DNA of 64,000 nt from Macrostomum lignano (taxonomy: Eukaryota). This document shows, one piece after another, positions 1,391-40,900 of the stretch (the first letter of the stretch is position 1; each line of letters starts with the position of its first letter). The translations under genes and the position numbers were made by a program. Under the pieces are notes generated by a model that made no database searches, had not been told where the DNA came from, and saw only the letters and a list, made by a program, of their open reading frames with translations. The stretch is taken from the NCBI GenBank assembly GCA_002269645.1, contig NIVC01000592.1, positions 124,001 through 188,000 on the forward strand, in the 5' to 3' direction.

Positions 1391-1772
1391 GTCTGACACA
1401 GCTGCCTGACACAACTTTCTGACACAGCTGCCTGACACAACTTTCTGACACAGCTGTCTGACACAGTTTCCTGACATAGTCGGCTTACGCAGTTTTCAAG
1501 CGAAATTTTAATTCAGATCGGAAGTCAACAAGCATGCCAATTTCCATTGAAGGATTGTCAGTGATTGTTCGACAAAATCTCGAACCATCTCAACTCACTC
1601 GTTCTGTAGTCAGAGGATTCGAATTTTTTATAACAACAGCAATTGGAGCAAATTGTCAGTAAAGTTAATACCGAAAACTAATCACATGGTTGAGGTAAAG
1701 GAATCAAAAGAGGATCATAAAGGAGCAACAGAGGAACCAAAAGGTTTTTCAACAGCGGTCAGTTTGATCGAG

Positions 1773-11638
<9,866 letters not shown>

Positions 11639-14039: not shown

Positions 14040-15715
14040 GTCTCTTCTAGCTCTTGTGTCTCTTCTTCTAGCTCTTGTTTCTCTTCTTCTAGCTCCTGTG
14101 TCTCTTCTTTTAGCTCTTGTGTCTCTTCTTTTAGCTCTTGTGTCTCTTCTTCTAGCTCTTGTGTCTCTTCCTCTAGCTCCTGTGTCTCTTCTTCTAGCTC
14201 TTGTGTCTCTTCTTCTAGCTCTTGTGTCTCTTCCTCTAGCTCTTGTGTCTCTTCTTCCAGCTCTTGTGTCTCTTCTTCTAGCTCTTGTATCTCTTCTTCT
14301 AGCTCTTGTGTCTCTTCTTCTAGCTCTTGTATCTCTTCTTCTAGCTCTTGTGTCTCTTCTTCTAGCTCTTGTGTCTCTTTTAGATCTTGTGTCTCTTCTT
14401 CTAGCTCTTGTGTCTCTTCTTCTAGCTCTTGCGTCTCTTCTTCTAGCTCTTGTGTCTCTTCTTCCAGCTCTTGTGTCTCTTCTTCTAGCTCTTGTGTCTC
14501 TTCTTCTAGCTCTTGTGTCTCTTCTTCTAGCTCTTGTATCCCTTCTTCTAGCTCTTGTGTCTCTTCTTCTAGCTCTTGTGTCTCTTCTTCTAGCTCTTGT
14601 GTCTCTTCTTCTAGCTCTTGTGTCTCTTCTTCTAGCTCTTGTGTCTCTTCTTCTAGCTCTTGTGTCTCTTCTTCTAGCTCTTGTGTCTCTTCCTCTAGCT
14701 CCTGTGTCTCTTCTTCTAGCTCTTGTGTCTCTTCTTCTAGCTCTTGTGTCTCTTCCTCTAGCTCCTGTGTCTCTTCTTCTAGCTCTTGTATCCCTTCTTC
14801 TAGCTCTTGTGTCTCTTCTTCTAGCTCTTGTGTCTCTTCTTCTAGCTCTTGTGTCTCTTCTTCCAGCTCTTGTGTCTCTTCTTCCAGCTCTTGTGTCTCT
14901 TCTTCTAGATCTTGTGTCTCTTCTTCTAGCTCTTGTGTCTCTTCTTCTAGCTCTTGTGTCTCTTCTTCTAGCTCTTGTGTCTCTTCTTCTAGCTCTTGTG
15001 TCTCTTCTTCTAGATCTTGTGTCTCTTCTTCTAGATCTTGTGTCTCTTCTTCTAGCTCTTGTGTCTCTTCTTCTAGCTCTTGTGTCTCTTCTTCTAGCTC
15101 TTGTGTCTCTTCTTCTAGCTCTTGTGTCTCTTCTTCTAGCTCTTGTGTCTCTTCCTCTAGCTCCTGTGTCTCTTCTTCTAGCTCTTGTGTCTCTTCCTCT
15201 AGCTCCTGTGTCTCTTCTTCCAGCTTTTGTGTCTCTTCTTCTAGCTCTTGTATCTCTTCTTCTAGCTCTTGTGTCTCTTCTTCTAGCTCTTATGTCTCTT
15301 TTAGATCTTGTGTCTCTTCTTCTAGCTCTTGTGTCTCTTCTTCCAGCTCTTGTGTCTCTTCTTCTAGCTCTTGTGTCTCTTTTAGATCTTGTGTCTCTTC
15401 TTCTAGCTCTTGTGTCTCTTCTTCTAGCTCTTGTGTCTCTTCTTCCAGCTCTTGTGTCTCTTCTTCTAGCTCTTGTGTCTCTTTTAGATCTTGTGTCTCT
15501 TCTTCTAGCTCTTGTGTCTCTTCTTCTAGCTCTTGTGTCTCTTCTTCCAGCTCTTGTGTCTCTTCTTCTAGCTCTTGCGTCTCTTCTTCTAGCTCTTGTG
15601 TCTCTTCTTCTAGCTCTTGTGTCTCTTCTTCTAGCTCTTGTGTCTCTTCTTCTAGCTCTTGTGTCTCTTCTTCTAGCTCTTGTGTCTCTTCTTCTAGCTC
15701 TTGTGTCTCTTCTTG
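14040..15715. repeat. 21-bp minisatellite (TCTTCTTCTAGCTCTTGTGTC), ~80 copies
   Basis: Direct reading; includes 18-bp deletion variants. Confidence 0.95.
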
Positions 15716-21139: not shown

Positions 21140-21684
21140 ATCTAGCTAATAAGGATACAAGATTGAGGAACGAACAAAGGGGACAGCCAGATTAACCGTC
21201 TAGGGGAAGAACTCTGGCTGGCTCCGGGGAATTGAAGTGCCATGTTGTTTCTCTCCGAACATTTCTCTCTTCCGAAGTTCAGGACTGCTCTGACTGAGTG
21301 AGAAGCGCGCCAGCCAGCCTCGCAGTGAATGGCTTCAGCCAGCTCATCATCGCTGCTAGCATAGCTATGCACTCAAATTCCGCGCAATAGCCAAACCAAC
21401 GCAGCATCAATCCTTCATCAACTCTCACCTAGCCAGACGCGCTCAAGCCCCTAGGGCCCTGAGTCAACAAGGCCGAATGCCAAAGTTTGCAGGACCGTGG
21501 GAAATCCATCCCCAGCTCGCCCTCAGCCGCCCGCCGACTTGGCAGATTGGGAAGACGGCAAGGGGGCCAGAGTGAAGTGGGTGTAATTTCACGCCTCGGG
21601 ACTCCAGTGCGAACTCCGTGTTGACATTGCAAGGTGTTGCTGGCACGGCGCCCCCCGAAATAACATATGTAGGATCCAGATTGG

Positions 21685-23590
21685 CTCTGGTGTCTAACAG
21701 ATGGTCCCAGTGTCTAACAGATGGTCCCGGTGTCTAACAGATTGGTCCCGGTGTCCAAAGATTGGTCCTGGTGTCTAACAGATGGTCCCAGTGTCTAACA
21801 GATGGTCCCGGTGTCTAACAGATTGGTCCCGGTGTCCAAAGATTGGTCCTGGTGTCTAACAGATTGGGGCTCCGGTGTCTAACAGATTGGTCCTGGTGTC
21901 TAACAGATTGGGGCTCCGGTGTCTAACAGATTGGCCCCGGTGTCCAACGGATCGGGGCTCCGGTGTCTAACAGATTGGCCCCGGTGTCCAACAGATTGGG
22001 GCTCTCGTGTCTAACAGATTGGTCCCGGTGTCTAACAGATTGGTCCCGGTGTCTAACAGATTGGTCCCGGTGTCTAACAGATTGGGGCTCTCGTGTCTAA
22101 CAGATTGGTCCCGGTGTCTAACAGATTGGGGCTCTCGTGTCTAACAGATTGGTCCCGGTGTCTAACAGATTTGTACCGATGTCTAAAAGATTGGTCCCGG
22201 TGTCTAACAGATTGGGGCTCTCGTGTCTAACAGATTGGCTCCGGTGTCTAACAGATTTGTCCCGGTGTCTAACAGATTTGTACCGATGTCTAACAGATTG
22301 GCTCCGGTGTCTAACAGATTGGTCTCGGTGTCTAACAGATTGGTCCAGGTGTCTAACAGATTGAGGCTCCGGTGTCTAACAGATTGGCTCCGGTGTCTAA
22401 CAGATTGGGGCTCCGGTGTCTAACAGATTGGCTCCGGTGTCTAACAGATTGGTCCCGGTGTCTAACAGATTGGGGCTCCGGTGTCTAACAGATTGGTCCC
22501 GGTGTCTAACAGATTGGGGCTCTCGTGTCTAACAGATTGGTCCCGGTGTCTAACAGATTTGTCCCGGTGTCTAACAGATTTGTACCGATGTCTAAAAGAT
22601 TGAGGCTCCGGTGTCTAACAGATTGGCTCCGGTGTCTAACAGATTGGGGCTCCGCTGTCTAACAGATTGGCTCCGGTGTCTAACAGATTGGTCCCGGTGT
22701 CTAACAGATTGGTCCCGGTGTCTAACAGATTGGTCCCGGTGTCTAACAGATTGGGGCTCCGGTGTCTAACAGATTGGTCCCGGTGTCTAACAGATTGGGG
22801 CTCTCGTGTCTAACAGATTGGTCCCGGTGTCTAACAGATTTGTCCCGGTGTCTAACAGATTTGTACCGATGTCTAAAAGATTGGTCCCGGTGTCTAACAG
22901 ATTGGGGCTCTCGTGTCTAACAGATTGGTCCCGGTGTCTAACAGATTGAGGCTCCGGTGTCTAACAGATTGGGGCTCTCGTGTCTAACAGATTGGTCCCG
23001 GTGTCTAACAGATTGAGGCTCCGGTGTCTAACAGATTGGCTCCGGTGTCTAACAGATTGGGGCTCCGGTGTCTAACAGATTGGCTCCGGTGTCTAACAGA
23101 TTGGTCTCGGTGTCTAACAGATTGGCGCTCTCGTATCTAACAGATTGGTCCCGGTGTCTAACAGATTTGTACCGATGTCTAAAAGATTGGTCCCGGTGTC
23201 TAACAGATTGGTCCCGGTGTCTAACAGATTGGTCCCGGTGTCTAACAGATTGGTCCCGGTGTCTAACAGATTGGGGCTCCGGTGTCTAACAGATTGGTCC
23301 CGGTGTCTAACAGATTGGTCCCGGTGTCTAACAGATTGAGGCTCCGGTGTCTAACAGATTGGCTCCGGTGTCTAACAGATTGGGGCTCCGGTGTCTAACA
23401 GATTGGCTCCGGTGTCTAACAGATTGGGGCTCCGGTGTCTAACAGATTGGCTCCGGTGTCTAACAGATTGGGGCTCTCATATCTAACAGATTGGTCCCGG
23501 TGTCTAACAGATTTGTCCCAGTGTCTAACAGATTTGTACCGATGTCTAACAGATTGGTCTCGGTGTCTAACAGATTGGCCCCGGTGTTTA
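21685..23590. repeat. 21-23-bp minisatellite (GGTGTCTAACAGATTGGTCCC), ~1.9 kb
   Basis: Direct reading. Confidence 0.95.
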
Positions 23591-24754
23591 AAAGGTTGGT
23601 TCCATACACGAGCGTATTATCCAACAGAATTGACCTGCCATTTTATTCAAATTCAAACCAGCTTACTACTAGTAGGCAGGCCAGAATTTATTTTTTTGTG
23701 TAAAGAAACTACATCCTTGACCTTAGATGATGCATTCAGTTAACAGGTTGAAAATTTAGACATTGAAGAGCAACTTCGCGGCAATTTAAGCTGCAACTGA
23801 GAGCATCCACAGCAGGTTCCAATTTGCAAACACTTGGCAATAGATCGGAATAAGGACCAGGATTTTATATTATTATGATTCTATAGATTTCATAAAAATA
23901 CGTCGACAAGCGCAAGGAGTATAAGAATATATTTTACAGGAAGGCGAAAAGTACAAAACGATGCCCAAATTGTCCGGCGGCCCTCGACAGCTTGGCAGGC
24001 AAAAAACTCGACGATAAAAAGTATTGATACCGATTAATGTACGCAGATAGGAGCGCGAGGCAGTTAAAACTCAAGAACCAACGCCATCTGTACAGGTGGA
24101 CCAGGTTGGCTGTAAACAAAGTAATTTCTCTCTAATTTATCCTCATCCTTCAGTCGTGGCACCCCGATGAAAACTGTACTCAGAGTCGTTGCAGGTAACA
24201 CAGGTAAAATGGGAAAGAAGTGGCTCTGGAGACGACTCTAAAACAACGAGATGTCACGGTACAAGTCGACAAAAAGAGTCCGAGTTGCTGTGAAATCGCT
24301 GAATTGCATCTGAAGCACATCTGCGTCATTTAATGAATTAGAATTGCATTTCGCATTCATAACAATTCTATTTATTCTAATTGGCTTAGTAGACTTTTTC
24401 AACAGTCGCCACTCCGTTGCATTGAAGTCTTTACAAGAATCGCTCCAGAGTTGCTAGAGTCACTATTGAGTTGCTTGCGGTGACTCTTTAGCGATTCTTG
24501 TCAACAGTAACGTTTTCACCGGGTCCACTCCGCTCCTCATCCTCCAGTTGTGGGCCACCAACACCTTTCTGATTGTACAGACAGGTCCAAGAAATAAAAC
24601 GATTTTGCAGATAAGAAATTGCATGCTTCGAAAGCAAACACAAACACATTGATCAGGAATAAATCTAGTGAAAGTAAAATTCAGTGTAATAAGTAATCCC
24701 TTCAATATCAGTCTTGAATAATAATTAACTATTAACAAAGCTGAAAAATGAAAT

Positions 24755-27700
24755 TCAAACATTGTGAAAGTAGAGATTAGCGCACACGCACAGCAGGAAA
24801 ATGGCCACCGAGTTGAAGTAAATTAATCGGCGAAATCTGGGCTCCAGGTCGCCTTGCCTGTACCAGTACACCTGGGCAATGGGAGAGGGGGGTTCACCAT
24901 CATATGCCTGCATCTATGGGATGGCTATAATATCTAAGGGATCTCTACATTCTCTATGGTATTTCTATAATCTTTATGGGATCTCTATAATCTATTGGAT
25001 CTCTATAATCTCTATAGGATCTTTATAATCTCTATGGGATCTCTATAATCTCTATGAGTAGTAGGAAAGTGGTACCCTCTACCGCCATCGCACCGGATTG
25101 GCCGGGGCACCCGGCCAATGAGGGGAGAGGGCCCCCAAAAGACGCCCACCCCGACCCCAGACCCACCACCGCCGCACCCACCCCCGACCCCACCACCGCC
25201 ACGCACCCACCCCCGACCCAAACCGGGCCCCCAAAGACGCCCACCCCGACCCCAAACCCACGCACCCACCCCCGACCCCAAACCGGGCCCCCTCCTATCC
25301 ATCCCAAACCAAGGCCCCTCCTGTCCTGCACCCCATCTCATAACCAAGGCCCCCTCGTGTCCTACACCCCGTACATCCCATACCAAGGCCTCCTCCTATC
25401 CTGCACCCCATCCCAAACCAAGGCCCTGCCTGTCCTGTACCCCATCCCATACCAAGGCCCCTTCCTGTCCAGCACCCCATCCCATACCGGAGGCAGGAGA
25501 AATGGGTCGGGCAAGCCCAGGAGTGGGGTCGGGCAGGCCGGTCGAGCAGGCCAGATGAGGGGTCGGGCAGCCGAGTGTCTGGTTGATTGTCCAAGGGTGG
25601 GTATCGAGATGTGAATGAGTGTCCATTGGCGAGTGTCCTCCTACCGCGTGTGGTGACACGCAGCACAGAGTTTCAATGTGATCCGGTAGAGGGCCCGATT
25701 GCTTGGAATTTCCTAGTAGAGAGGGGAAGGGATTCTATTGGTCGAGCAAGCATTTGAAGTGATTTCCGAGTAATGTGGAGAAGGGATTCTATTGGTCGAT
25801 AGGTCTCTGGTGAACGATTTGGTTTGGACCCTGCGGGAGAAGGGCCCCAGTACCCTTTATAAATAAAGCACCTCGGCCCCATAGATTTTTTATTTATTTT
25901 AGATTGAATTAAAAATACAACAAAAATGCAAATAACTTGCGACTTCTGCGAGTCATCAGTAACCGGGGGCATTGAGGAGCACTATGCGGTATGCCCTGCG
26001 ATACCAGCACTGTTTGAGTCAGATGACTCCCCAACGATTCATTTTCAACTGATCAAGGAGGCGTTTAATGGCAGGTCCCGACTTTACCGGGCCAGTGAAT
26101 GCGGCGACCCGAGGAATTTGTTGGAAAACACTCGTCAAGCTTTCATTGACTTGATCACCCAGCATCAACGTGAGCCAGGAACCGCCATCAAAGTTCAGCT
26201 GCGCCTCGGGGTCCTGATGCAGCGCATCATTAATGGCCGCTGCGCCGCCGAGAACACCGCCTGGTTTGCTGCCAAGGTCCACTCTCTTATTCGGAGTGAG
26301 GAGGAGCAATACTTCTCTGACGACATGCAGACTATCCTCAACCGGATAGAGAAGTACCTACGCAATGGCAGTGGCTGGGAAATCAGGACCACTCGGTGTG
26401 TTGACGTGTCAACCGCAAGTTATTATCTACCGCATGGAGCGTCGTGCAAAAGGCCAAGAATGAGTTCAAGAAAGACAACGGGCCGCTAAACAACTCCCTG
26501 TAGACCCTAGAGAATGTTCGCAAGCAAGTGAGCTACCGACTGGTTTATTCAAAGCCTGTGGCCAAGTCAGCATTCCGCGACCAGATGATTTTCAAGGGGG
26601 ATTTAGTTCTGGTGCACGTTCTCAAGATGACAAGCCAGTGTCGGCCAGTGCGATCTGGACACTAGCAAGCTCTTTTTCTCACAATAACATTCTTTTCACA
26701 TATCTTTAATTTTTAACTATATGCATGTAAATTTAATACGAACATACTATATTTTAAATAATAATAAATACAAGCTTTACTCTATGATATTTGGTACACT
26801 GCAGGAGAGAAAAATGCTCTTTCACAAGAATATTTTTGCCATAATTAGTCATTTTTGTGCACATCTCTGGGTTAAAATCCTCATTGAAATGTATGTATTT
26901 TATCCAAAAGTATGTAAGTTTTCGCGCACAGTGATTAAAAGTGCGCAATATGACGTGACTTTTTTTGACAACATCCGTCAATTTTCATGCACAGGTTCGA
27001 GTAAAAATCCCTATTGAAATACATGTATTTTGTGCACAAGTATGCAAGTTTTCGTGCACAGTGTTAAAAAGTATGCAAAGTGTCGAGGTTTTTCGTGCAC
27101 ACATTCGGGTAAAAATTCCCATTGAAATGTATGTATTTTGTGCAAACATGCATGCTTTTTCGTGCACAACAGAGGCTAGAAACGCTAAATCCGCAGAAAC
27201 TGGTGGGGTGGGTAGTTTTTTTTTCAAGCCAGGTGTTTGGCATAAGAAAATGATAGGTACTAGAAATTTGGTAAAATGAAAAAGAAAAAGGCAATTTCCA
27301 ACCTTCTGCCAGGTATTTATTTCGACTGCAGTAGGCCGGGCAGCTATGGCGGCTATCAGGCATTAAATCGAGAGTTGCACAAACAGCACGGGCCCAAGTT
27401 TAGTGTAGGGCAGGTATGTATATACGATATACTCCTAAACCAATGATTTTCTAGAAAATTCCAGCTTAGGTTTTTAGTTGCTAGCAGTTTCCAGTTTTCA
27501 CACTAAAGGTAAAAACGTGGCTCCAAGACCAAGATGTCTACACACTGCATAGAGATAAACGCAAAAACTTTCGTCGAGCACCGATTGTGGTGCGGGGCAT
27601 GGATGACCAGTGGGAACTGGACCTGGTTGAAATGCTACCGTTTGCCAAGTACAATGGCGGCGTACGATATATTTTATGCTGCATTGATGTGCTCAGCAAG

Positions 27701-30700
27701 TTTGCCTGGGCTCAGCCGGTGCGCCGCAAGACAGCCGAGGAGGTTGCAGCCGGATTCGAAGCGATCCTAAATCGAGCTCACCCTCGATGCCCACGAGCAG
27801 TTCGGACCGACCGTGGAAAAGAGTTTTGTAACACCCAGTTCCGAGCCCTCTGCGTAAACCACAAAATTCATGCATTCACATCAAGTAGTGACCAGAAATG
27901 CGCAGTCATTGAGAGATGGAACCGCACACTGAAATCCCGAATGTGGCGGTACTTCCGTCACAAGTCAACATTAACCTGGACCGATGTGCTTCAACCCTTA
28001 GCAAAGGCATACAACCAGAGTATTCATCGGAGTATTCAAAGCCGACCAGTTGATGTCGACAAGTCAAACGAGATGGAAATTTGGCACCGGCTTTACGATG
28101 GGAAGCTTCCTGAGACTCGTGAAAAGGTCTCCAGACCAAAGTTCAAGGCAGGAATGATGGTGCGAATCTCTCTTCGCAATCTGGCCAACCCATTCACCAA
28201 GGGATACACAAGGGGATGGAGTGAGGAAGTATTTGAAGTCAAGTCCCTCCACCCCAAGCATTATCCATACATGTACACTCTGATCGATGCCCGAGGTGAA
28301 GAGTTGGAAGGCAAGTTTTACGAGCCGGAAATGCAGCAAGTGACTGGAAACAAGAAGCTGTGGATCATCGACAAGGTTCTCAACATTAAGAAGCTGAAGA
28401 GTGGAAAGATTCGGTATTTGGTTCAGTGGCGCGATTCAGAAAAACCCAGTTGGATTGACGTCAGACTGCAGCTGATGCCCTCTCCCGCATTTTGCTACCA
28501 GATCAAGCATCCGAACCTACTTTGCTGGACTCTGACTGAGCTCCTCTACGGCATAACAGTAGTAGTGAGATCTGCCTATGCACCGAGTAATAATAATAAT
28601 AATAATAATAATAATATTTTTGCTGTAACTTTACTTCTGTATTTCTTTTGTGTACAAAAGATAAAAAAATTAACGCGAATGCGACAATAGTGTTTGTACA
28701 ACAATGCTTACGAAAGTGAAATGTTTTTTTTGTTTATTTTATTGGCAGGTCCATGGATTGCAAAGCATAAAATTACATGTTAAAAGCTCGTATTAGCACA
28801 AAAAAGTTTATTAAGAACGGAAGGGCAGTATTAAGGCCCGTCGCCTGTATTTACAAAACAGTATTATCGCCCGGAATCAAAGCATGATGGGGCAATATTA
28901 TGGCCAGTATTGACAAAGCAATATATACAACAGTGCATGATCAGTACTATGGTTCAAAACTATATTAAAAAAAAGTTAATTGACGAAATGACCAGTTGTC
29001 GCTTCATGCATTGCGCGTCGCTTCATTGGTGGCTGGTGGAATGAAGGCTGTTGGTTCTTCTCAGCTGTTGGTGGCTCTTCCAGAGTTTCGAATGTAAATC
29101 TCTTTCTAAATTCAGCCTGAACTGCTTGGAAGGCCCCCCAGTGGTCGTCCCAATCTGCCGACTGCCTGTCAGGTACTTGCATCAGTTGGTCGAGCGTAAG
29201 CCTTGCTGCCCATGCTGAACACTTCAGATTCCGTAGGGTGGTATCCCATGGATCGCCGATCGGTGGCTCGACCGGAGGCTCTCGCTTGTCATTTTGTCTA
29301 GGACCCATTGCTTTTGAGCCCAGACTTCGCGCCAAAGTGTAGTAGGAAGCGGTAAGGCGTGCCTTAGGTGCACCGGCGGTCCGAGTACAGTTGGAAGGCG
29401 CCAGAGTGTGATTACGCCATTTTGCACAACCACTTGCCTGTTGCCACCCAGAAGGCATTGCGCATCGATACACTTTCTTGCAAACTCTTCCAGTCGTTCC
29501 TTCAGGCTGCCCAAGTGGCAAAACTGGTGGACGGTGAGCTCCATGCCAGGCAGACCTGGTCGATACTCTTCATCAAATTTGTACCACTTTCTGATGCTGA
29601 TGCACTTCGAGTGCGACCTGACGCCGATTCGAAATCTGTTCGATAATGTCTTGAAGTTCATTTTGTTCACTGTGAGCTTTCCTTCCGGCTGTGTGCGAGA
29701 TTATATACGACGAGAGTTGGTAAGTAACACCAGCTCCCGCTCCATAGCAATAACCAATCCGAACCCCGAATCCAACCCCACACAACAGCCCTCTCGCAGG
29801 AACTCTCGGCAAATCAGGAGCCCTTCCGGGGACCACTCAGCCATTTAGAAACCAGCTCCTGTTCCATAGCAATAACTAATCCGAACCCCAAATCCAACCC
29901 CCACACAGCAGCCCTTTCGCAGGAACTCGGGCCTTAACAAAGTCTCAGCCATCAACGTAACAGGAGGTGGCGGGACCTTCTTGCGGCCCTCTGGCCGCCA
30001 AGAAGTAGCGTTCTAGGTCTAACGACCTCACGCTGTACCCGCCACAGCAAGATACAGTACAACCAAAGCATGGAATGAGGGTTTTGCCTTGGCTAGCTTT
30101 AAAGGCGGTAAGTGAGACAGGTAATAAGACTTGGGTTTAGGAATTAGGAGGGGGGAATTGGTTTTGGTTAGGGTACAGGATAGAAGGACCTTGCTACATG
30201 GGATGGGGCAAGGCGTAGGATAGGAGGGGGACTTGGTATGGGATGCATGGGGTGCAGGACAGGAGGGGGTCTTGGTATGGGATGCACGGGGTGCAGGACA
30301 GGAGGGGTGTAGGACAGGAGGGGGTCTTGGTATGGGATGCACGGGGTGCAGGACAGGAGGGGTGTAGGACAGGAGGGGGTCTTGGTATGGGATGCACGGG
30401 GTGCAGGACAGGAGGGGTGTAGGACAGGAGGGGGTCTTGGTATGGGATGCATGGGGTGCAGGACAGGAGGGGGTCTTGGTATGGGATGCACGGGGTGCAG
30501 GACAGGAGGGGGTCTTGGTATGGGATGCACGGGGTGCAGGACAGGAGGGGGTCTTGGTATGGGATGCACGGGGTGCAGGACAGGAGGGGTGTAGGACAGG
30601 AGGGGTGTAGGACAGGAGGGGGCCTGGTTTGGGGTCGGGGGTGGGTGCGTGGGTTTGGGGTCGGGATTGGGTGCGTGGCGGTGGTGGGTTTGGGGTCGGG

Positions 30701-33700
30701 GTGGTTTTGGGGGTCGGGGTGGGTTTGGCGTCGGGGTGGGCGTCTTCGGGGCGCCCTCTCCCCTCATTGGCCGGGTGCCCCGGCCAATCCCGTGCGATGG
30801 CGGTAGAGGGTACCACTTTCCTACTACTTTCCTACTACTACGGTAGGAGCTGGTTTCTAAATGGCTGAGTGGTCCCCGGAAGGGCTCCTGATTTGCCGAG
30901 AGTTCCTGTGAGAGGGCTGTTGTGTGGGGTTGGATTCGGGGTTCGGATTGGTTATTGCTATGGAGCGGGAGCTGGTGTTACTTACCAACTCTCGTCGTAT
31001 ATAATCTCGCACACAGCCGGAAGGAAAGCTCACAGTGAACAAAATGAACTTCAAGACATTATCGAACAGATTTCGAATCGGCGTCAGGTCGCACTCGAAG
31101 TGCATCAGCATCAGAAAGTGGTACAAATTTGATGAAGAGTATCGACCAGGTCTGCCTGGCATGGAGCTCACCGTCCACCAGTTTTGCCACTTGGGCAGCC
31201 TGAAGGAACGACTGGAAGAGTTTGCAAGAAAGTGTATCGATGCGCAATGCCTTCTGGGTGGCAACAGGCAAGTGGTTGTGCAAAATGGCGTAATCACACT
31301 CTGGCGCCTTCCAACTGTACTCGGACCGCCGGTGCACCTAAGGCACGCCTTACCGCTTCCTACAAAACTTTGGCGCGAAGTCTGGGCTCAAAAGCATTGG
31401 GTCCTAGACAAAATTGTCAAGCGAGAACCTCCGGTCAAGCCACCGATCGGCGATCCATGGGATACCACCCTACGGAGCCTGAAGAGTGTGCAGCATGGGC
31501 AGCAAGGCTTACACTCGACCAACTTATACAAGTACCTGACAGGCAGCCGGCAGAGTGGGACGACCACTGGGAGGCTTTCCAGGCAGTTCAGGCTGAATTT
31601 AGAAAGAGATTTGCATCCGAAACTCTGGAAGAGCCACCAACAGCTGAGAAGAACCAACAGCCTTCATTCCACCAGCCACCAATGAAGCGACGCGCAATGC
31701 ATGAAGCGACAACTGGTCATTTCGTCAATTAACGTTTTTAATATAGTTTTGAACCATAGTACTGATCATGCACTGTTGTATATACTGCTTTGTCAATACT
31801 GGCTATAATATTGCCCCATCATGCTTTGATTCCGGGCGATAATACTGTTTTGTAAATACAGGCGACGGGCCTTAATACTGCCCTTCCATTCTTAATAAAC
31901 TTTTTTGTGCTAATACGAGCTTTTAACATGTAATTTTATGCTTTTCAATCCATGGACCTGCCAATAAAATAAACAAAAAAAAAAACATTTCATTTTCGTA
32001 AGCATTGTTGCACAAACATAGTCGCATTCGCGTTTATTTTTTCTTATATTTTGTACACAAAAAATATAGAAGTAAAGTTATAGGAAAAATATTATTATTA
32101 TTATTATTATTATTATTACTCGGTGCATAGGCAGATCTCACTACTACTGTTATGCCGTAGAGGAGCTCAGTCAGAGTCCAGCAAAGTAGGTTCGGATGCT
32201 TGATCTGGTAGCAAAATGCGGGAGAGGGCATCAGCTGCAGTCTGACGTCAATCCAACTGGGTTTTTCTGAATCGCGCCACTGAACCAAATACCGAATCTT
32301 TCCACTCTTCAGCTTCTTAATGTTGAGAACCTTGTCGATGATCCACAGCTTCTTGTTTCCAGTCACTTGCTGCATTTCCGGCTCGTAAAACTTGCCTTCC
32401 AACTCTTCACCTCGGGCATCGATCAGAGTGTACATGTATGGATAATGCTTGGGGTGGAGGGACTTGACTTCAAATACTTCCTCACTCCATCCCCTTGTGT
32501 ATCCCTTGGTGAATGGGTTGGCCAGATTGCGAAGAGAGATTCGCACCATCATTCCTGCCTTGAACTTTGGTCTGGAGACCTTTTCACGAGTCTCAGGAAG
32601 CTTCCCATCGTAAAGCCGGTGCCAAATTTCCATCTCGTTTGACTTGTCGACATCAACTGGTCGGCTTTGAATACTCCGATGAATACTCTGGTTGTATGCC
32701 TTTGCTAAGGGTTGAAGCACATCGGTCCAGGTTAATGTTGACTTGTGACGGAAGTACCGCCACATTCGGGATTTCAGTGTGCGGTTCCATCTCTCAATGA
32801 CTGCGCATTTCTGGTCACTACTTGATGTGAATGCATGAATTTTGTGGTTTACGCAGAGGGCTCGGAACTGGGTGTTACAAAACTCTTTTCCACGGTCGGT
32901 CCGAACTGCTCGTGGGCATCGAGGGTGAGCTCGATTTAGGATCGCTTCGAATCCGGCTGCAACCTCCTCGGCTGTCTTGCGGCGCACCGGCTGAGCCCAG
33001 GCAAACTTGCTGAGCACATCAATGCAGCATAAAATATATCGTACGCCGCCATTGTACTTGGCAAACGGTAGCATTTCAACCAGGTCCAGTTCCCACTGGT
33101 CATCCATGCCCCGCACCACAATCGGTGCTCGACGAAAGTTTTTGCGTTTATCTCTATGCAGTGTGTAGACATCTTGGTCTTGGAGCCACGTTTTTACCTT
33201 TAGTGTGAAAACTGGAAACTGCTAGCAACTAAAAACCTAAGCTGGAATTTTCTAGAAAATCATTGGTTTAGGAGTATATCGTATATACATACCTGCCCTA
33301 CACTAAACTTGGGCCCGTGCTGTTTGTGCAACTCTCGATTTAATGCCTGATAGCCGCCATAGCTGCCCGGCCTACTGCAGTCGAAATAAATACCTGGCAG
33401 AAGGTTGGAAATTGCCTTTTTCTTTTTCATTTTACCAAATTTCTAGTACCTATCATTTTCTTATGCCAAACACCTGGCTTGAAAAAAAAACTACCCACCC
33501 CCACCAGTTTCTGCGGATTTAGCGTTTCTAGCCTCTGTTGTGCACGAAAAAGCATGCATGTTTGCACAAAATACATACATTTCAATGGGAATTTTTACCC
33601 GAATGTGTGCACGAAAAACCTCGACACTTTGCATACTTTTTAACACTGTGCACGAAAACTTGCATACTTGTGCACAAAATACATGTATTTCAATAGGGAT

Positions 33701-36700
33701 TTTTACTCGAACCTGTGCATGAAAATTGACGGATGTTGTCAAAAAAAGTCACGTCATATTGCGCACTTTTAATCACTGTGCGCGAAAACTTACATACTTT
33801 TGGATAAAATACATACATTTCAATGAGGATTTTAACCCAGAGATGTGCACAAAAATGACTAATTATGGCAAAAATATTCTTGTGAAAGAGCATTTTTCTC
33901 TCCTGCAGTGTACCAAATATCATAGAGTAAAGCTTGTATTTATTATTATTTAAAATATAGTATGTTCGTATTAAATTTACATGCATATAGTTAAAAATTA
34001 AAGATATGTGAAAAGAATGTTATTGTGAGAAAAAGAGCTTGCTAGTGTCCAGATCGCACTGGCCGACACTGGCTTGTCATCTTGAGAACGTGCACCAGAA
34101 CTAAATCCCCCTTGAAAATCATCTGGTCGCGGAATGCTGACTTGGCCACAGGCTTTGAATAAACCAGTCGGTAGCTCACTTGCTTGCGAACATTCTCTAG
34201 GGTCTACAGGGAGTTGTTTAGCGGCCCGTTGTCTTTCTTGAACTCATTCTTGGCCTTTTGCACGACGCTCCATGCGGTAGATAATAACTTGCGGTTGACA
34301 CGTCAACACACCGAGTGGTCCTGATTTCCCAGCCACTGCCATTGCGTAGGTACTTCTCTATCCGGTTGAGGATAGTCTGCATGTCGTCAGAGAAGTATTG
34401 CTCCTCCTCACTCCGAATAAGAGAGTGGACCTTGGCAGCAAACCAGGCGGTGTTCTCGGCGGCGCAGCGGCCATTAATGATGCGCTGCATCAGGACCCCG
34501 AGGCGCAGCTGAACTTTGATGGCGGTTCCTGGCTCACGTTGATGCTGGGTGATCAAGTCAATGAAAGCTTGACGAGTGTTTTCCAACAAATTCCTCGGGT
34601 CGCCGCATTCACTGGCCCGGTAAAGTCGGGACCTGCCATTAAACGCCTCCTTGATCAGTTGAAAATGAATCGTTGGGGAGTCATCTGACTCAAACAGTGC
34701 TGGTATCGCAGGGCATACCGCATAGTGCTCCTCAATGCCCCCGGTTACTGATGACTCGCAGAAGTCGCAAGTTATTTGCATTTTTGTTGTATTTTTAATT
34801 CAATCTAAAATAAATAAAAAATCTATGGGGCCGAGGTGCTTTATTTATAAAGGGTACTGGGGCCCTTCTCCCGCAGGGTCCAAACCAAATCGTTCACCAG
34901 AGACCTATCGACCAATAGAATCCCTTCTCCACATTACTCGGAAATCACTTCAAATGCTTGCTCGACCAATAGAATCCCTTCCCCTCTCTACTAGGAAATT
35001 CCAAGCAATCGGGCCCTCTACCGGATCACATTGAAACTCTGTGCTGCGTGTCACCACACGCGGTAGGAGGACACTCGCCAATGGACACTCATTCACATCT
35101 CGATACCCACCCTTGGACAATCAACCAGACACTCGGCTGCCCGACCCCTCATCTGGCCTGCTCGACCGGCCTGCCCGACCCCACTCCTGGGCTTGCCCGA
35201 CCCATTTCTCCTGCCTCCGGTATGGGATGGGGTGCTGGACAGGAAGGGGCCTTGGTATGGGATGGGGTACAGGACAGGCAGGGCCTTGGTTTGGGATGGG
35301 GTGCAGGATAGGAGGAGGCCTTGGTATGGGATGTACGGGGTGTAGGACACGAGGGGGCCTTGGTTATGAGATGGGGTGCAGGACAGGAGGGGCCTTGGTT
35401 TGGGATGGATAGGAGGGGCCCGGTTTGGGGTCGGGGGTGGGTGCGTGGGTTTGGGGTCGGGGGTGGGCGTCTTTGGGGGGCCCGGTTTGGGTCGGGGGTG
35501 GGTGCGTGGCGGTGGTGGGGTCGGGGGTGGGTGCGGCGGTGGTGGGTCTGGGGTCGGGGTGGGCGTCTTTTGGGGGCCCTCTCCCCTCATTGGCCGGGTG
35601 CCCCGGCCAATCCGGTGCGATGGCGGTAGAGGGTACCACTTTCCTACTACTTCTATGGGATCTCTATAATCTCTATGGGATCTTTATAATCTCTATGGGA
35701 TCTTTAAAATCTCTATAGGATTTTTATAATCTCTATAGGATCTCTATAATCTCTATGGGATCTTCATAATCTCTATGGGATCTCTATAATCTCTATAATC
35801 TCTATGGGATCTCTATAATCTCTATGGGATCTCTATAATCTCTATGGGATCTCTATAGTCTCTATAGGATCTTTATAATCTCTATGGGATCTTTATAATC
35901 TCTATAGGATCTTTATAATCTCTATGGGATCTCTATAATCTCTATAGGATCTTTATAATCTCTATAGGATCTTTATAATCTTTATGGGATCTCTATAATC
36001 TCTATAATCTCTATGGGATCTCTATAATCTCTATAATCTCTATGGGATCTCTATAATCTCTATAATCTCTATGGGATCTCTATAATCTCTATAGGATCTC
36101 TATAATCTTTATGGGATCTTTATAATCTCTATAGGATCTTTATAATCTCTATGGGATCTCTATAACCTCTATGGGATCTTTATAATCTCTATAGGATCTT
36201 TATAATCTCTATAGGATCTTTATAATCTCTATGGGATCTTTATAATCTCTATGGGATCTCTATAACCTCTATGGGATCTTTATAATCTCTATAGGATCTT
36301 TATAATCTCTATGGGATCTCTATAATCTCTATGGAATCTCTATAATCTTTAAGGGATCTCGAATCTCAGATGCATCATTTCGATTCTCAAAGGCATCTCA
36401 AAATCTCAAAAATGTCTAAAAAGTATCAGAAGGATCGCTATACTCTAAACTCACTAAGGTCTCACTAAATGGAATCCTTTAATAACATAAACTACAAAAA
36501 TGCCCAACTATACAGCCTGCCAAAATTAGCATTCCCAAATAATACAAAACCCACCAGCAGCAGATGCGAAGAGGCCAGCATGGCTATGCAGCCAGCGAAC
36601 ATGATGTTGACTCCACGCGGTGGCCACTTGGGAAAGACAAATGCGAATACCAGAGTGAGCAGTACAGAGAGGCTGACCACCCCGGCTATGATGTAGTGCA

Positions 36701-36773: not shown

Positions 36774-37981
36774 TTGGCTAGAGTTTTATATTTGTCTGCT
36801 TTGGCGATTTCTGTTGGCTATTAATGTAGTTTTAGTTTTTTTGTGCTGCAATTGAAACCAAAGCAGTTAAATAGGATTTATATTTATATGATTTTTGTAC
36901 CTGAAATTTATTGCAATACAGATTACTACATTAATAGTAGAACTACAAAGAGGGGGAATCTCCCCTTGACAATTCTTTGCTACACAGGAATGGAGCAACA
37001 CAGGCACACAAAATTCAAGAACACAGGCTAAACTTTCTATTGTGCACCTTCTCAAACAAGAATCAAGTCGCCAGCTCTCTGGAATATTGAGATATTTGAT
37101 GATTATGCTAGAAAGTTGAAAATTTTCCATAAGCTCTAGTGTATTTAGTATGCCCCTGTGCACCAATCAGCACCCTTGCACCTCAGTGCAGCCTTGCCAA
37201 GTCTCTGAATTTCATCAGCAGGTCAACCACATGTGTCTGCATCAGCTTTGACTTTGCTGGTCACTAGAAGCCTTCACACAGACGGAGCTTCTGGACCTTC
37301 AACAGGTAGTACCAAGTGACTATAGACATATTGTTACAAATTTCTCAAGCTTTGCAAATTAAGCCTTGATGGTAGGCAAGCCTCAACAGTTTGGACATCC
37401 TTAGCTAGTCTCTCAAGCATTCTATCATTACCTGGATACCATTGGTACCTTTAAGAGATTATACCAAGTGACTAAAAACACCCAGATTTGAATTTCTCTA
37501 GTTTTGCTAAGCAACCCTCAACAGTGGGCAAGCCTTAACTTTAACTTTTGAAGCCACTAGAGACCCTCTAAATGGTAAAAAAACAAATAAAATTGTATAT
37601 TATTTATAAAATATAGCTTATATTTAAGATCATAATACAAAAAATTAGCACACATTAGAAACAAATAGCATATAGTTAGCATATAAAATAGGCTATATTT
37701 AAGGACTTTTGCTACACTTTTTGGTTTGGCATATTGTAACATATCTGCATATCCAATTTAAAAGTAAAGAATTTTGTATTTACTTGTCTTTTGTATTTGT
37801 ATGATAGTATTTCTATAGTATTTCTCTTTTATTGTATTTTCCACTGTATGTATTTATGTAATGTTGCATAATTGTTTTATAATTTAGTTTTGTTTTAATG
37901 AACAATATGAAAAAATATATAATAAATTGTCAATGGTTCACTCATAAGAGGTCCCCACTCTGATTTGGCACTTTCGGCTGA

Positions 37982-40900
37982 TGTGGTATATGCGCATATA
38001 AAGTATATTTCATTTCACACACATTGGCCATAGACACTGTCCCTGTTAACCCTGCGTTCTAAAGCTAATATAAGGAGAGCAAATATAAAGGAAATGAATG
38101 TTAACATCGGCATGGCAAGAGCCCGCTACCAAGCTTGAGATTACTAACCATAATTCACCTGGACTTCGAGTTGGTAACGGAAGTCGGATGTAACATTGGC
38201 GACGAGGATTCTTCAGAAGAAGACAAAATGACCGCGCCAAATACTGCTTCGAAAATCAGCACATTTGATCCGGCACAACCTGAAAGGTGGACTGTATACG
38301 AGGAGCGTCTGGAACAATACTTCATCGCTAAATCCATCACCAAAGAGGAGATTAAGCGAGCCGAGCTCATCACAGTAATTGGTGAAGACTGCTATACGTT
38401 GCTCAGAGACTTACTGTCTCCAGACTCCCCGAAGGACAAATCCTACGATGATTTAATTGAAAAGTTACGAACGCATTTCACCCCAACGCCGAAAAGAATC
38501 GTCGAGAGATACAACTTTCATCACCGAAGCCAGCAGGAAGGCGAATCCATTGCAGAGTATGTCGCGCAGCTACGGAAGTTGGCAGCGACCTGTTCGTTTG
38601 GAGGCTTTTTGTCAGAGGCGATCAGAGACAGACTGGTTTGTGGACTACGAAGCAAGCTGACACAGCAAAGGCTGCTGCAGGAGGACGATGTTTCACTGGA
38701 CGACGCAGTTAAAATCTCGACAGCAATCGAAATCGCAGAGAAGGGTGCAATGCAGATCCACACTGGAAGAGACATTGTCGGCCTGGCTCAGGCCAATGCG
38801 GTATGTGGAAGATCATCTGCTAAGGGATCGGGACCGACGAATCCGGCCAGTTCAGACGACCGGTGCTACAGGTGCCTCTCTTCTGGGCACTGGGCGAGAA
38901 ACTGTCCCAAAAGATTGCATGTATGCAGTCGATGCAATAAACCAGGTCATGTTGAGAAGGCGTGCAGGACGAAGCAGAAGCAGTTCAGCGGAAACCAACC
39001 GCCGCACAGCAAGAAGAAGTTCGAAACCAAGCAGAGCTACAAAGGTAGGAAAATAAAGCATCTGAGTGCAAATGGAAGCCCCGGCAGTAGTGAGAAGTCG
39101 TACGATTTCTCTGACGTCAAGAACGTCGCTGTCAATTCAAATTACGAGGCTAAGCGAATGAGCGCACAGAAGGCTCGGTTCAAGCCTTTCACAGAGACAC
39201 TGCAAGTCAACGGGTCTCCGATTAAATTCGAAGTGGACACCGGCGCCGAGCGCACAATTGTAAACAAATCGACAGCGGAACTAATCCGAGTTAAACCGCG
39301 CGGCACGACCTTGGTCCTCACATCTTATTCTAACGAACAGATTCCCCTACTTGGAGAGGCTGTGGTTCAGGTTGTATTTGGCGACATTGCGACGGAGCTG
39401 CAGGTCGTCGTCACTGACGGCACAAAGCAGAACCTGCTAGGTCGCGATTGGATAACGCAGCTTGATCCCCTGGCCCGGAAATACGCAGGAGAAGCGTCAA
39501 CAGTGGGAATTCTTTCCCTCGATGCTGATCACGAGCTCAAGACGATTCTAGAAGAAAATTCGGAATTATTCTCAGATGGTCTTGGGAAGATAAAACATTA
39601 TACAGCCAGACTGCATCTCAAGGAGAACACAACTCCAAAGTTTTGTAAAGCACGACCGGTACCATTTGCTCTTAAGCCCGCCATCGAGCAGGAACTCAAA
39701 AGCCTAGAGAATCAGGACATTATCCGGAAGGTGAAGACGTCTGACTATGCAAGTCCAATCGTCCCTGTGCTGAAGAAGGATGGAAAATCGATACGAATCT
39801 GTGCAGACTATAAGCGAACCATAAACCCTGCCCTCGAGGTGGACATTTATCCGCTAGGCAAGCCGGACGAACTGTTTACTCGACTCAGCGGAGGCAAATT
39901 CTTTACAAAACTGGACATATCTCAGGCCTTTCTTCAGCTGGAGCTACAGGAGGAGTGCCGCAAGTACACCACTATCAACACCCATATGGGCCTGTACGAA
40001 TACAACAGATTAGTTATGGGCCTGGCAAGCTCTTCAGCTCAGTTTCAGGAGGCTATGGACAAGATTCTGAGCGATACCGATGCGATTTGTTTCGTCGATG
40101 ATATCGTCATTAGCGCCGCATCACAAAGCGAGCATAACAAAAAGCTGAGAAACGTTTTGGTTCTGCTGAAGAACCACGGAATTAAACTGAACAAGAGCAA
40201 ATGTGAATTCATGATGCGCGAGATTGAGTTCCTCGGTCACGTGATCGACGAGAACGGCGTGCATCAGTCACCGAGAATTATGAGAGCCATCGCGGAGGCT
40301 CCAAGGCCAACCAATATTCCAGAAGTCCGCTCGCTAGTTGGGCTAATCAACTACTATAGGAAGTTCATCAGAGGCCTGTCCGACATCCTAGCACCTCTAA
40401 ATGCATTGCTCCAGAAGGACGCTGAGTTTATTTGGAGTAACGAGTGTGAACGAGCATTTGTTGCGTGCAAGTCAGCTCTAACATCTACTCAAGTACTAGT
40501 CCACTACGACCCGGACAAGCCGCTGGTTGTTCATACCGATGCGTCATGCTATGGTGTCGGCGCGGTGCTTTCACATATTATGAGCAATTCGGATGAGAAG
40601 CCAATCTGTTATGCGTCCAGAGGCCTGTCCAAGGCTGAGAAGAACTATTCGCAAATAGAAAAGGAAGGTTTAGCAATAGTCTTCGCGGTGAAAAAGTTCC
40701 ACCAGTATTTGTACGGCAGACGGTTTATTCTGGTCACTGACCATAAACCGCTTGTGACGATATTCGGTCCGAAGAACAACATTCCAAGCATAGCTGCCAG
40801 TTGGTTGCAGCGCTGGGCTGTGATTCTATCAGCCTATCAGTTCGAGATTCGATACAGGCGGACAGACGAACATGGAAATGCGGACGCGTTGTCAAGACTG

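What the first reader, a model, noticed from the sequence alone, without database searches (positions are those of the whole stretch)
25057..35651. Giant palindromic Polinton/Maverick derivative integrated as one unit
Seen: two 4.8-kb inverted arms (25057-29860, 30845-35651) around a 984-bp spacer, AGTAGT termini, and a perfect 6-bp TSD (TCTATG) around the whole 10.6 kb. Known: Polintons are linear elements with TIRs of a few hundred bp to ~1 kb, 6-bp TSDs, pPolB, RVE integrase, ATPase, protease and capsids. Here the terminal repeat is effectively 4.8 kb and carries the genes, so ~90% of the element could fold into a hairpin or panhandle. Inference: this is a defective, doubled genome that was still a substrate for integration, analogous to copy-back defective viral genomes. 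It may belong to an unrecognised class of non-autonomous Polinton satellites.
Basis: partly seen in the sequence, partly recalled or inferred. Interest (0 to 1): 0.92.

Follow-up and report, generated by a model that had tools for sequence, protein, structure and literature searches.

The report
Inverted one-and-a-half-copy gutted Maverick insertion
A 10.6-kb insertion in a satellite array consists of one complete 5.8-kb gene-poor Maverick/Polinton derivative joined at its intact end to a second, inverted and truncated copy; the pair was most likely joined outside the chromosome and integrated as one piece, which is unusual but is a single event.

Summary
Arms 25057-29860 and 30845-35651 are inverted copies, the ends read AGTAGT/ACTACT, and TCTATG flanks the 10,595-bp block.

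- The 984-bp "spacer" holds a third, perfect element terminus at 30828. So 25057-30828 is a complete 5,772-bp element with ordinary TIRs of about 420 bp. A 16-nt junction and an inverted copy cut at its nt 4804 follow it.
- The site lies in a 20-bp satellite, so the TSD match has a chance probability of about 3-5%, not 1 in 4096.
- The arms differ in a mosaic way: 31 of 32 substitutions lie in one 729-bp patch.

The unit is a gutted vertebrate-type Maverick. It keeps a spliced rve-chromo integrase with an intact DDE triad, a PC4-like gene and a pPolB remnant without its catalytic core. It has no capsid, ATPase or protease genes.

The internal terminus has no host DNA beside it. Removing the block restores the satellite phase. 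I therefore conclude that the two copies were joined as free linear DNA and inserted through the outermost ends.

The closest precedent is the inverted dimers formed by undersized helper-dependent adenovirus genomes. I found no sister copies and could not check reads. Interest is moderate.

The parts
24913..25056 (.). Left part of the interrupted 20-bp satellite array (unit TCTATGGGATCTCTATAATC); its last 6 nt (25051-25056, TCTATG) are the left copy of the target-site duplication
25057..30828 (+). Copy A: complete 5,772-bp deletion derivative of a Maverick/Polinton, with AGTAGT...ACTACT termini
   Evidence: The 34-nt terminus is exact at 25057 (+) and 30828 (-); TIR alignment; gene content
25057..25478 (+). 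Left TIR of copy A. The first 111 nt are 95% identical to the right TIR, and identity is about 79% over about 440 nt. It contains C-rich 26-35-nt subterminal tandem repeats
25926..26684 (+). pPolB remnant in copy A (one broken gene). It keeps the N-terminal region and a short C-proximal piece. Breaks: one large internal deletion of roughly 800 of about 1,290 codons that removes the polymerase core, two frameshifts, two in-frame stops, and loss of the C-terminal end
   Evidence: tblastn with pPolB of L005 and L001 gives collinear hits. Representatives P0042 (E 4.7e-19) and P0049 carry DNA_pol_B_2 downstream of the matched stretch
26852..27168 (+). Three copies of a 79-nt direct repeat, non-coding, upstream of the integrase gene; function unknown
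27276..28690 (+). Integrase gene of copy A. Exon 1 is 27276-27413, a GT-AG intron is 27414-27508 (95 nt), and exon 2 runs to the stop. It has an rve core with D, D and E present and a chromodomain. The last ~9 residues of relatives are replaced by a ~78-residue unrelated tail
   Evidence: Pfam rve 2.9e-13 with a weak Chromo hit; retroviral integrase hits in the PDB; 41 relatives; splice model and alignment
28617..29345 (.). Divergent patch between the arms (counterpart about 31360-32090). It holds 31 of the 32 substitutions (4.3%) and 8 of the 12 indels. It covers the 3' ends of the convergent integrase and PC4-like genes and the space between them
29023..29670 (-). PC4-like gene of copy A; its reading frame is interrupted once relative to copy B
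   Evidence: Pfam PC4 2.7e-5, just under the gathering score; tblastn with the PC4-domain protein of L001, E 4e-13; ORF comparison
30414..30828 (-). Right TIR of copy A, ending in the internal (third) terminus at 30828. An expanded 39/55-nt tandem array lies further in, at 30217-30605
30829..30844 (.). Junction: an 11-nt re-iteration of the terminal 11 nt (30829-30839) plus 5 nt of filler (30840-30844). It contains no host or satellite sequence and no TCTATG
30845..35651 (-). Copy B: inverted, corresponds to nt 1-4804 of copy A and lacks the right-hand 968 nt. It carries its own pPolB remnant (about 34023-34781), integrase gene (32034-33430) and PC4-like gene (31035-31685, the longer open frame)
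35652..36360 (.). Right part of the same satellite array; its first 6 nt (35652-35657, TCTATG) are the right copy of the target-site duplication

Best explanation
The block is an inverted '1.8-mer' of a replication- and capsid-defective Maverick/Polinton.

Shown:
- One complete 5.8-kb unit has normal TIRs, an apparently intact spliced integrase gene, a PC4-like gene and a gutted pPolB.
- Its untrimmed right terminus is joined, through 16 nt, to the interior of a second, inverted copy.
- The outermost two termini abut a 6-bp duplication inside a satellite that is otherwise continuous.

Inferred:
- The two copies were joined while they were free linear DNA. The internal terminus is complete and has no host DNA next to it.
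- The two parent molecules differed slightly, which would explain the 729-bp divergent patch.
- The join was made either by a strand-displacing polymerase that switched template at a free genome end, or by host end joining with a templated insert. The 11-nt re-iteration is what an aberrant jump-back between AGT triplets at nt 12-14 and nt 1-3 of the end motif would give.
- A Maverick integrase, its own or a helper's, then inserted the composite through the two outermost ends and ignored the internal one.
- Replication, and packaging if it occurred, must have been supplied in trans.
- Doubling may have been favoured because a 5.8-kb genome is far below the 12.7-24.6 kb of intact Mavericks.
- Outside the patch the arms are practically identical, so the event looks recent.
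For: Three exact termini. Junction sequence without host DNA. TSD and in-phase empty site. TIRs of copy A. Integrase with D, D, E present and relatives sitting in contigs with Peptidase_C5 and DNA_pol_B_2. pPolB remnant. No hit to any other gene of L001, L004 or L005. Mosaic divergence, P about 1e-24 under uniformity, and at most 0.12% divergence outside the patch. End motif, 6-bp TSD, TIR and size ranges and jump-back in vertebrate Mavericks (PMC8097293). Undersized helper-dependent adenovirus genomes are packaged as direct and inverted dimers (PMC4189039). phi29 polymerase makes mostly inverted chimeras by 3'-end displacement and re-priming (PMC1855051).
Against: This is one locus in one assembly, and I could not inspect reads. 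Because of the satellite, the TSD match alone has a chance probability of about 3-5%. I found no sister copy and no helper with the same TIR; the tools hold no eukaryotic genome collection, so this is absence of data rather than evidence of absence. The jump-back reading of the 11-nt repeat is not unique, since any slippage at a 3-nt microhomology gives the same result. The divergent patch could also be later gene conversion from a third copy. Near-identity of the arms could reflect arm-to-arm conversion rather than youth.
Confidence: 0.55

Rival explanations
1. Intramolecular copy-back of a single defective genome. In this reading one molecule was copied, the polymerase turned back on its own product, and the palindrome was integrated. 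The divergent patch arose later by gene conversion from another family member.
For: 90.7% of the block is self-complementary. The arms are identical over 4,075 nt apart from one substitution. Strand-displacing protein-primed-type polymerases favour intramolecular inverted chimeras (PMC1855051).
Against: A simple copy-back gives a symmetric hairpin-like molecule with one turn-around point. Here a complete second end with a perfect terminus plus an 11-nt terminal re-iteration lies inside the block, so a free genome end took part in the join. The sharply bounded 4.3% patch needs an extra event.
Confidence: 0.15
2. Artefact of the library or the assembly. This could be a chimeric long read (strand switch, a missed adapter, or whole-genome amplification with a phi29-type polymerase), or a mis-join of two different genomic copies lying in the same satellite family.
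For: Palindromes are a classic long-read and MDA artefact; more than 85% of MDA chimeras are inverted (PMC1855051). The region is packed with minisatellites that invite mis-assembly. No reads were available to me.
Against: Fold-back artefacts are symmetric about an arbitrary point and their arms are copies of one molecule. Here the centre is asymmetric and coincides to the base with a biological terminus. The arms differ by 31 substitutions in one patch. There is no shared sequence at the junction that could mislead an assembler. Both outer flanks continue the same array in phase. There are no Ns.
Confidence: 0.15
3. Rearrangement after integration. Either copy A inserted alone and part of it was later duplicated in inverted orientation next to it, or two independent insertions into the array were fused by a deletion.
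For: The satellite makes a coincidental TCTATG at the far side possible in about 3-5% of placements. Inverted repeats such as TIRs promote replication template switches.
Against: Copy A has no TSD or satellite at its right end. A deletion would have had to stop exactly at an untrimmed terminus. An inverted duplication of the left part would carry the left flank in reverse orientation, but the right flank runs in direct orientation and in phase. Copy B ends exactly at a terminus abutting the TSD, which is what an integrase-made joint looks like.
Confidence: 0.1
4. This is one member of an established family whose normal architecture is the doubled form, that is, a propagating long-TIR non-autonomous Maverick 'satellite'.
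For: Polintons with gene-carrying TIRs of about 2 kb that still insert are described in butterflies (bioRxiv 10.1101/2025.02.07.637071). The composite has two perfect outer ends and an apparently intact integrase gene in each arm.
Against: No second copy was seen anywhere I could search. 17 related loci have no inverted repeat of 150 nt or more. The retained internal terminus and filler look like an unprocessed accident rather than a settled design.
Confidence: 0.05

Closest known systems
Vertebrate Mavericks / Polintons (Barreat & Katzourakis 2021, PMC8097293)
   Same: 5'-(AGT)2//(ACT)2-3' end motif, 6-bp TSD, TIRs within the 46-1,447-bp range, an rve integrase and a pPolB gene (here only a remnant). 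Most genomic copies of vertebrate Mavericks are also defective.
   Different: The unit is 5.8 kb, against 12.7-24.6 kb for intact elements. It has no capsid, ATPase or protease genes, and its pPolB lacks the catalytic core. It nevertheless looks freshly integrated. The integrase gene has a spliceosomal intron, whereas intact vertebrate Mavericks are reported as intronless. It is present as an inverted 1.8-mer.
Inverted and direct dimers of undersized helper-dependent adenovirus genomes (reviewed in PMC4189039)
   Same: A protein-primed linear dsDNA genome that is far below packaging size and depends on a helper is recovered as a covalent inverted dimer closer to wild-type length. Adenoviruses share the pPolB, protease and capsid lineage with Polintons.
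   Different: Those are laboratory vector genomes in virions, not chromosomal insertions, and are usually whole-unit dimers. Here the second unit is truncated, the product is integrated, and packaging is only inferred.
Butterfly polintons with ~2-kb gene-carrying TIRs (bioRxiv 10.1101/2025.02.07.637071)
   Same: The inverted terminal duplication contains genes, so each insertion carries two copies, and the elements still produce insertions.
   Different: There the TIRs are about 2 kb of a full-length autonomous-looking element and recur in many insertions and species. Here the arms are 4.8 kb of a 5.8-kb defective unit, a third terminus sits inside, and only one locus is known.
Copy-back defective viral genomes of RNA viruses, and long inverted terminal duplications in adenovirus incomplete particles (own knowledge; Daniell 1976 could not be opened)
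   Same: Defective genomes whose two ends are the same end in inverted orientation, generated by polymerase template switching and dependent on a helper.
   Different: Copy-back genomes have one turn-around and no internal complete terminus, and they are not integrated.
Inverted chimeras made by phi29 DNA polymerase in multiple displacement amplification (PMC1855051)
   Same: A strand-displacing family-B polymerase of the protein-primed group joins a displaced 3' end to a new template at 2-21 nt of complementarity, and the products are mostly inverted.
   Different: That is an in-vitro reaction on random templates. Here it serves only as a biochemical precedent, and as a possible artefact route.
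Ginger1 / Ginger2-TDD cut-and-paste transposons with Gypsy-like integrase (PMC2836005)
   Same: A few-kb TIR element whose only apparently intact enzyme gene is an rve-type integrase or transposase.
   Different: Ginger elements make 4-5-bp TSDs and have TGTNR termini. This element has a 6-bp TSD, AGTAGT termini, a pPolB remnant and Maverick-type integrase relatives.

Membership tests
Polinton/Maverick | Retrovirus-like (rve, DDE) integrase | tested here: met
   Pfam rve 2.9e-13. PDB retroviral integrases match down to E 3.6e-5. D, D and E fall in invariant columns. The nearest relatives sit in contigs with DNA_pol_B_2 and Peptidase_C5.
Polinton/Maverick | [quoted passage not shown] | tested here: not met
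   Only a remnant is present: the N-terminal region plus a short C-proximal piece, with the catalytic core deleted and with frameshifts and stops. The remnant shows descent from a Polinton, but the element cannot be an autonomous member.
Polinton/Maverick | Terminal inverted repeats with the (AGT)2//(ACT)2 or (AG)3//(CT)3 end motif | tested here: met
   AGTAGT at 25057 and ACTACT at 30828 and 35651. The TIR is about 420 nt. The motif and the TIR range are from PMC8097293.
Polinton/Maverick | 6-bp target-site duplication | tested here: met
   TCTATG on both sides of the composite, and the empty site is in phase. The satellite context weakens this evidence, with a chance probability of about 3-5%.
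Polinton/Maverick | Morphogenetic module (major and minor capsid proteins, packaging ATPase, adenain-like protease) | tested here: not met
   tblastn with all called genes of L001, L004 and L005 hits only the integrase, the PC4-like gene and the pPolB pieces. The remaining ORFs have no Pfam hit.
Polinton/Maverick | Length of intact elements, 12.7-24.6 kb in vertebrates | tested here: not met
   The unit is 5,772 bp and the composite is 10,595 bp. The range is from PMC8097293.
Copy-back / snap-back defective genome | A single turn-around point, both arms copied from one template, and no complete internal terminus | tested here: not met
   A third exact terminus and 968 nt of unique right-end sequence lie between the arms. 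The arms differ by 4.3% in one patch.
Copy-back / snap-back defective genome | Both genome ends are the same end in inverted orientation, and the genome depends on a helper | tested here: met
   Both outer ends are the left-end type and are identical over 3.5 kb. The replication and capsid genes are absent. Helper dependence itself is inferred.
Propagating non-autonomous Polinton family ('satellite') | Several copies with the same architecture at different sites with different TSDs | not testable with these tools
   No eukaryotic genome collection is on hand. The window's proteins are not on record. The terminus 20-mer gave 0 hits in viral contigs and one chance hit in metagenomes.
Ginger / TDD transposons | 4-5-bp TSD and TGTNR termini | tested here: not met
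   The TSD is 6 bp and the termini are AGTAGT. The Ginger features are from PMC2836005.

The most novel reading that the evidence does not exclude
The locus would be a preserved product of a step in the Maverick life cycle that has not been observed directly. In this reading, an undersized, helper-dependent genome was doubled in inverted orientation by the protein-primed polymerase switching template at a free genome end, leaving a jump-back signature. It was possibly selected because the dimer comes closer to capsid size, and it was then integrated through the outermost ends. The same route would explain how gene-carrying long TIRs arise in Polintons. A side consequence is that a 4.8-kb perfect inverted repeat of the integrase gene could give hairpin RNA that silences the family, as the Mu killer locus does for MuDR in maize (own knowledge).
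Probability: 0.25. Interest if true: 0.7.

Novelty: new variant of a known kind. Interest (0 to 1): 0.45.

Why it matters
Mavericks/Polintons are thought to be viruses that replicate as linear protein-primed genomes and integrate with a retrovirus-like integrase, but free intermediates have hardly been seen in animals.

This insertion carries an untrimmed genome end joined to the inside of another copy, with no host DNA between them. That is indirect sequence evidence for three things:
- Linear extrachromosomal copies existed.
- A derivative without polymerase and capsid genes was still handled in trans.
- The integrase can take a composite with an internal end.

It also offers a concrete origin for long, gene-carrying TIRs, and it parallels the dimerisation of undersized adenovirus genomes.

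For genome annotation, the practical lesson is that the 'giant TIR' is two copies, and that a TSD inside a satellite needs a phase check.

It remains one locus without read support, so it is a lead rather than a result.

Tried and rejected
- **Sister copies or a helper.** Exact-protein look-ups of the window's pPolB-remnant ORF and integrase ORF found nothing on record. The terminus 20-mer gave 0 hits in IMG/VR. It gave one hit in metagenome contigs (L008) that shares nothing else with the window and is a chance match.
- **Word-based protein search with the 187-aa ORF.** No hit. The exhaustive HMMER search was needed.
- **TIRs or long inverted repeats in relatives.** None of 150 nt or more in 17 loci, and none in L001 or L005. 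These are short-read contigs, so this is uninformative. Contig ends do not show the end motif.
- **A last mini-exon encoding the conserved C-terminal residues of the integrase.** Not found in either arm. The C-terminal tail therefore differs from that of relatives.
- **Nested insertion (A into B or B into A).** Rejected. There is no B sequence to the left of A, and A has no TSD at its right end.
- **Ginger/TDD identity.** Rejected on TSD length and termini.
- **MAFFT count of 41 substitutions.** This was inflated by a misplaced 1-nt indel. The recount gives 32.
- **Rfam and tRNA scans of the window.** Empty.
- **Papers that could not be opened.** Kapitonov & Jurka 2006 and Daniell 1976. What I say about them rests on citing papers or on my own knowledge.
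Not tested; no tool here identifies a eukaryotic host.

Full report
**1. The observation**

The inverted arms are real. The repeat finder returns a collinear chain of segments between 25057-29860 and 30845-35651 that are 95-99% complementary, with 984 nt between the innermost pair. A global alignment gives 4804 against 4807 nt, 32 substitutions and 12 small indels. The block is 10,595 bp, and 90.7% of it lies in the arms. The left end reads AGTAGTAGG and the right end CCTACTACT, and TCTATG precedes 25057 and follows 35651. The window has no Ns.

**2.

(a) A 34-nt probe from the left terminus matches exactly three times: at 25057 (+), 35651 (-) and 30828 (-). None is expected in shuffles. The third match lies inside the 'spacer'.

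Reading 29800-30900 shows the following order:
- the right-hand TIR ends at 30828;
- the terminal 11 nt are repeated once more (30829-30839);
- 5 nt of filler follow (30840-30844);
- the interior of the inverted copy then begins.

So 25057-30828 is a complete element of 5,772 bp (copy A). Its own TIRs are 25057-25478 and 30828-30414. They are 95% identical over the first 111 nt and about 79% over about 440 nt. The right side also carries an expanded 39/55-nt tandem array. The segment 30845-35651 is a second copy (B), inverted and cut at the point equivalent to nt 4804 of A.

(b) The insertion lies in a 20-bp satellite, at 24913-25056 on the left and 35652-36360 on the right. The satellite unit contains TCTATG, and 2.8% of positions in the right-hand array begin with that hexamer. 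The TSD match is therefore worth about 1 in 20-35, not 1 in 4096. On the other hand, joining the flanks after removing one hexamer gives an array in perfect phase, with 20/20 matches to the unit across the join.

(c) The arms are a mosaic. 31 of the 32 substitutions and 8 of the 12 indels lie in 28617-29345, which is 4.3% divergence. The other 4,075 nt carry one substitution and four 1-nt indels in homopolymer or low-complexity runs. Under uniform divergence the probability of this is about 1e-24, and the 95% upper bound on divergence outside the patch is 0.12%. An earlier MAFFT count of 41 substitutions was inflated by a misplaced indel.

**3. What the unit is**

*Integrase.* The longest ORF (27587-28690) has an rve core (Pfam 2.9e-13), a weak chromodomain hit and matches retroviral integrases in the PDB. 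Of its 41 relatives, the closest are metagenomic, at 77%, 72% and 55% identity.

The 55% relative, P0003, lies in a 14.4-kb contig (L001) that also carries a PC4-domain gene, a Peptidase_C5 (adenain-like) gene and a DNA_pol_B_2 gene. A 43% relative lies in an 18.9-kb contig (L005) with a complete 1,290-aa pPolB. These contigs are Polinton/Maverick genomes.

The integrase gene of the window has one GT-AG intron of 95 nt (27414-27508). With the exons joined as they stand, the protein aligns with its relatives straight across the join. The D, D and E residues fall in invariant columns. The last ~9 residues of relatives are replaced by an unrelated tail, and I found no terminal mini-exon. Both arms carry the gene, and the two products are identical up to that tail.

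*pPolB remnant.* The 187-aa ORF at 25926-26489 is the N-terminal region of pPolB:
- It aligns with residues 53-189 of the L005 polymerase.
- It is followed at once by a piece that matches residues 986-1053.
- In the exhaustive search, its best representative (P0042, E 4.7e-19) and P0049 both carry DNA_pol_B_2 downstream of the matched stretch.

The polymerase gene is therefore broken by one large internal deletion that removes the catalytic core, two frameshifts, two stops and loss of its end.

*PC4-like gene.* This gene lies on the opposite strand. Its frame is interrupted once in arm A relative to arm B.

*What is absent.* No other gene of L001, L004 or L005 has a counterpart in the unit. 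There is thus no capsid, ATPase or protease gene.

*Fit to known Mavericks.* The end motif (AGT)2//(ACT)2, the 6-bp TSD and the TIR length are those reported for vertebrate Mavericks. Intact vertebrate Mavericks are 12.7-24.6 kb, and their end-motif repeats are thought to serve jumping-back in protein-primed replication (PMC8097293). Ginger/TDD elements are excluded by their 4-5-bp TSDs and TGTNR termini (PMC2836005).

**4. How the composite most likely arose**

The internal terminus is complete to the last base and is followed by element-derived and filler bases, not by TCTATG or satellite. Copy A therefore never sat alone at this site, and copy B's inner end is not an integrase-made joint. 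The right flank continues the array in direct orientation and in phase. This excludes an inverted duplication that carried flank with it.

The simplest history is that a free linear copy (A) was joined by its end to the interior of another copy (B) outside the chromosome, and that an integrase then inserted the composite through the two outermost ends.

The 729-bp patch suggests that the two parents were slightly different family members. Later conversion from a third copy is the alternative.

On the strand that starts at the terminus, AGT occurs at nt 1-3, 4-6 and 12-14. A nascent 3'-AGT made at 12-14 that re-pairs at 1-3 gives exactly the observed 11-nt re-iteration. This is inference only; slippage by any polymerase, or end joining with a templated insert, would give the same result.

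There are precedents:
- phi29 polymerase produces mostly inverted chimeras by displacement and re-priming of 3' ends (PMC1855051).
- Helper-dependent adenovirus genomes below the packaging limit rearrange to larger sizes. [quoted passage not shown]

A 5.8-kb Maverick derivative is far below the 12.7 kb of the smallest intact vertebrate element, so doubling may have been favoured. This too is inference.

**5. Rivals**

- *Intramolecular copy-back.* This does not explain the internal terminus or the patch without extra events.
- *Read or assembly artefact.* I cannot exclude this without reads. However, such artefacts are symmetric about arbitrary points and their arms are copies of one molecule. 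Here the centre coincides with a biological terminus, and the arms differ in a bounded patch.
- *Two insertions plus a deletion, or a later local duplication.* These need a deletion that ends exactly at an untrimmed terminus, together with a 3-5% phase coincidence.
- *A propagating doubled family.* This is not excluded, but nothing supports it. I found no second copy in any collection I could reach, and there are no long inverted repeats in 17 related loci.

**6. Comparison and novelty**

By descent the unit is a Maverick/Polinton. As it stands, it fails the family's definition on two counts: it has no working pPolB and no morphogenetic genes. It is therefore a non-autonomous derivative.

Long gene-carrying TIRs are already described in butterfly polintons (bioRxiv 10.1101/2025.02.07.637071). 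Non-autonomous Polintons are hardly mentioned in the searchable literature.

In the papers I could search, I found no description of an integrated inverted 1.8-mer with a retained internal terminus. I rate it a new variant of a known kind, of moderate interest, resting on one locus.

**7. Limits**

Read support, copy number and population frequency were also out of reach. The functional test of trans-handling is outside what this report may propose, and the descriptive substitutes are listed under next steps. My session notes quote ORF bounds exactly as the tools printed them.

Noticed in passing
window 38135-42280 (+), with repeats at 37981-38195 and 42356-42570: There is an uninterrupted 1,381-codon Ty3/Gypsy gag-pol ORF with gag, zinc knuckle, aspartic protease, RT, RNase H and integrase domains. 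It is bracketed by 215-nt direct repeats that are 100% identical. It is probably a young LTR retrotransposon about 2.5 kb from the Maverick block.
   Followed up: partly
window, whole length (e.g. 327-1389, 5940-7106, 14043-15714, 21677-23600, 51121-52908): More than 20 minisatellite arrays with periods of 8-40 nt fill much of the 64 kb. No Rfam family and no tRNA were found. It is a repeat-dense region where TSDs need phase checks and where assemblies are fragile.
   Followed up: partly
window 27414-27508 (mirror about 33198-33292): The Maverick integrase gene has a canonical 95-nt GT-AG intron, whereas the closest metagenomic relatives (P0001, P0002) read straight through. Intact vertebrate Mavericks are reported as intronless (PMC8097293). 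This may therefore be an intron gained in this lineage.
   Followed up: partly
window 29729-29805 and 29851-29928: There is a 78-nt direct repeat with 122-nt spacing. The truncation point of copy B (29860/29861) falls 10 nt inside the second copy. I do not know whether the repeat played a part in the break.
   Followed up: no
window 26852-27168 (mirror in arm B): Three copies of a 79-nt repeat (76-78% identical) lie between the pPolB remnant and the integrase gene. It is non-coding and of unknown role; it could be promoter-region repeats or an unrelated insertion.
   Followed up: no
L001 (Logan SRR31628425, 14.4-kb contig); also L002, L003 and L007 from sibling runs: L001 is a compact, apparently intronless Maverick-like genome with a 282-aa PC4-domain protein next to the integrase, a Peptidase_C5 gene and a pPolB with an Endonuclease_7 hit. 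The PC4-like gene seems to be a conserved accessory gene of this lineage and is not among the eight core genes listed for vertebrate Mavericks.
   Followed up: partly
L008 (MJUJ01029304.1) 1657-1676: This is the only exact match to the 20-nt terminus in the metagenome collection. The contig shares nothing else with the window, so it is a chance match.
   Followed up: yes
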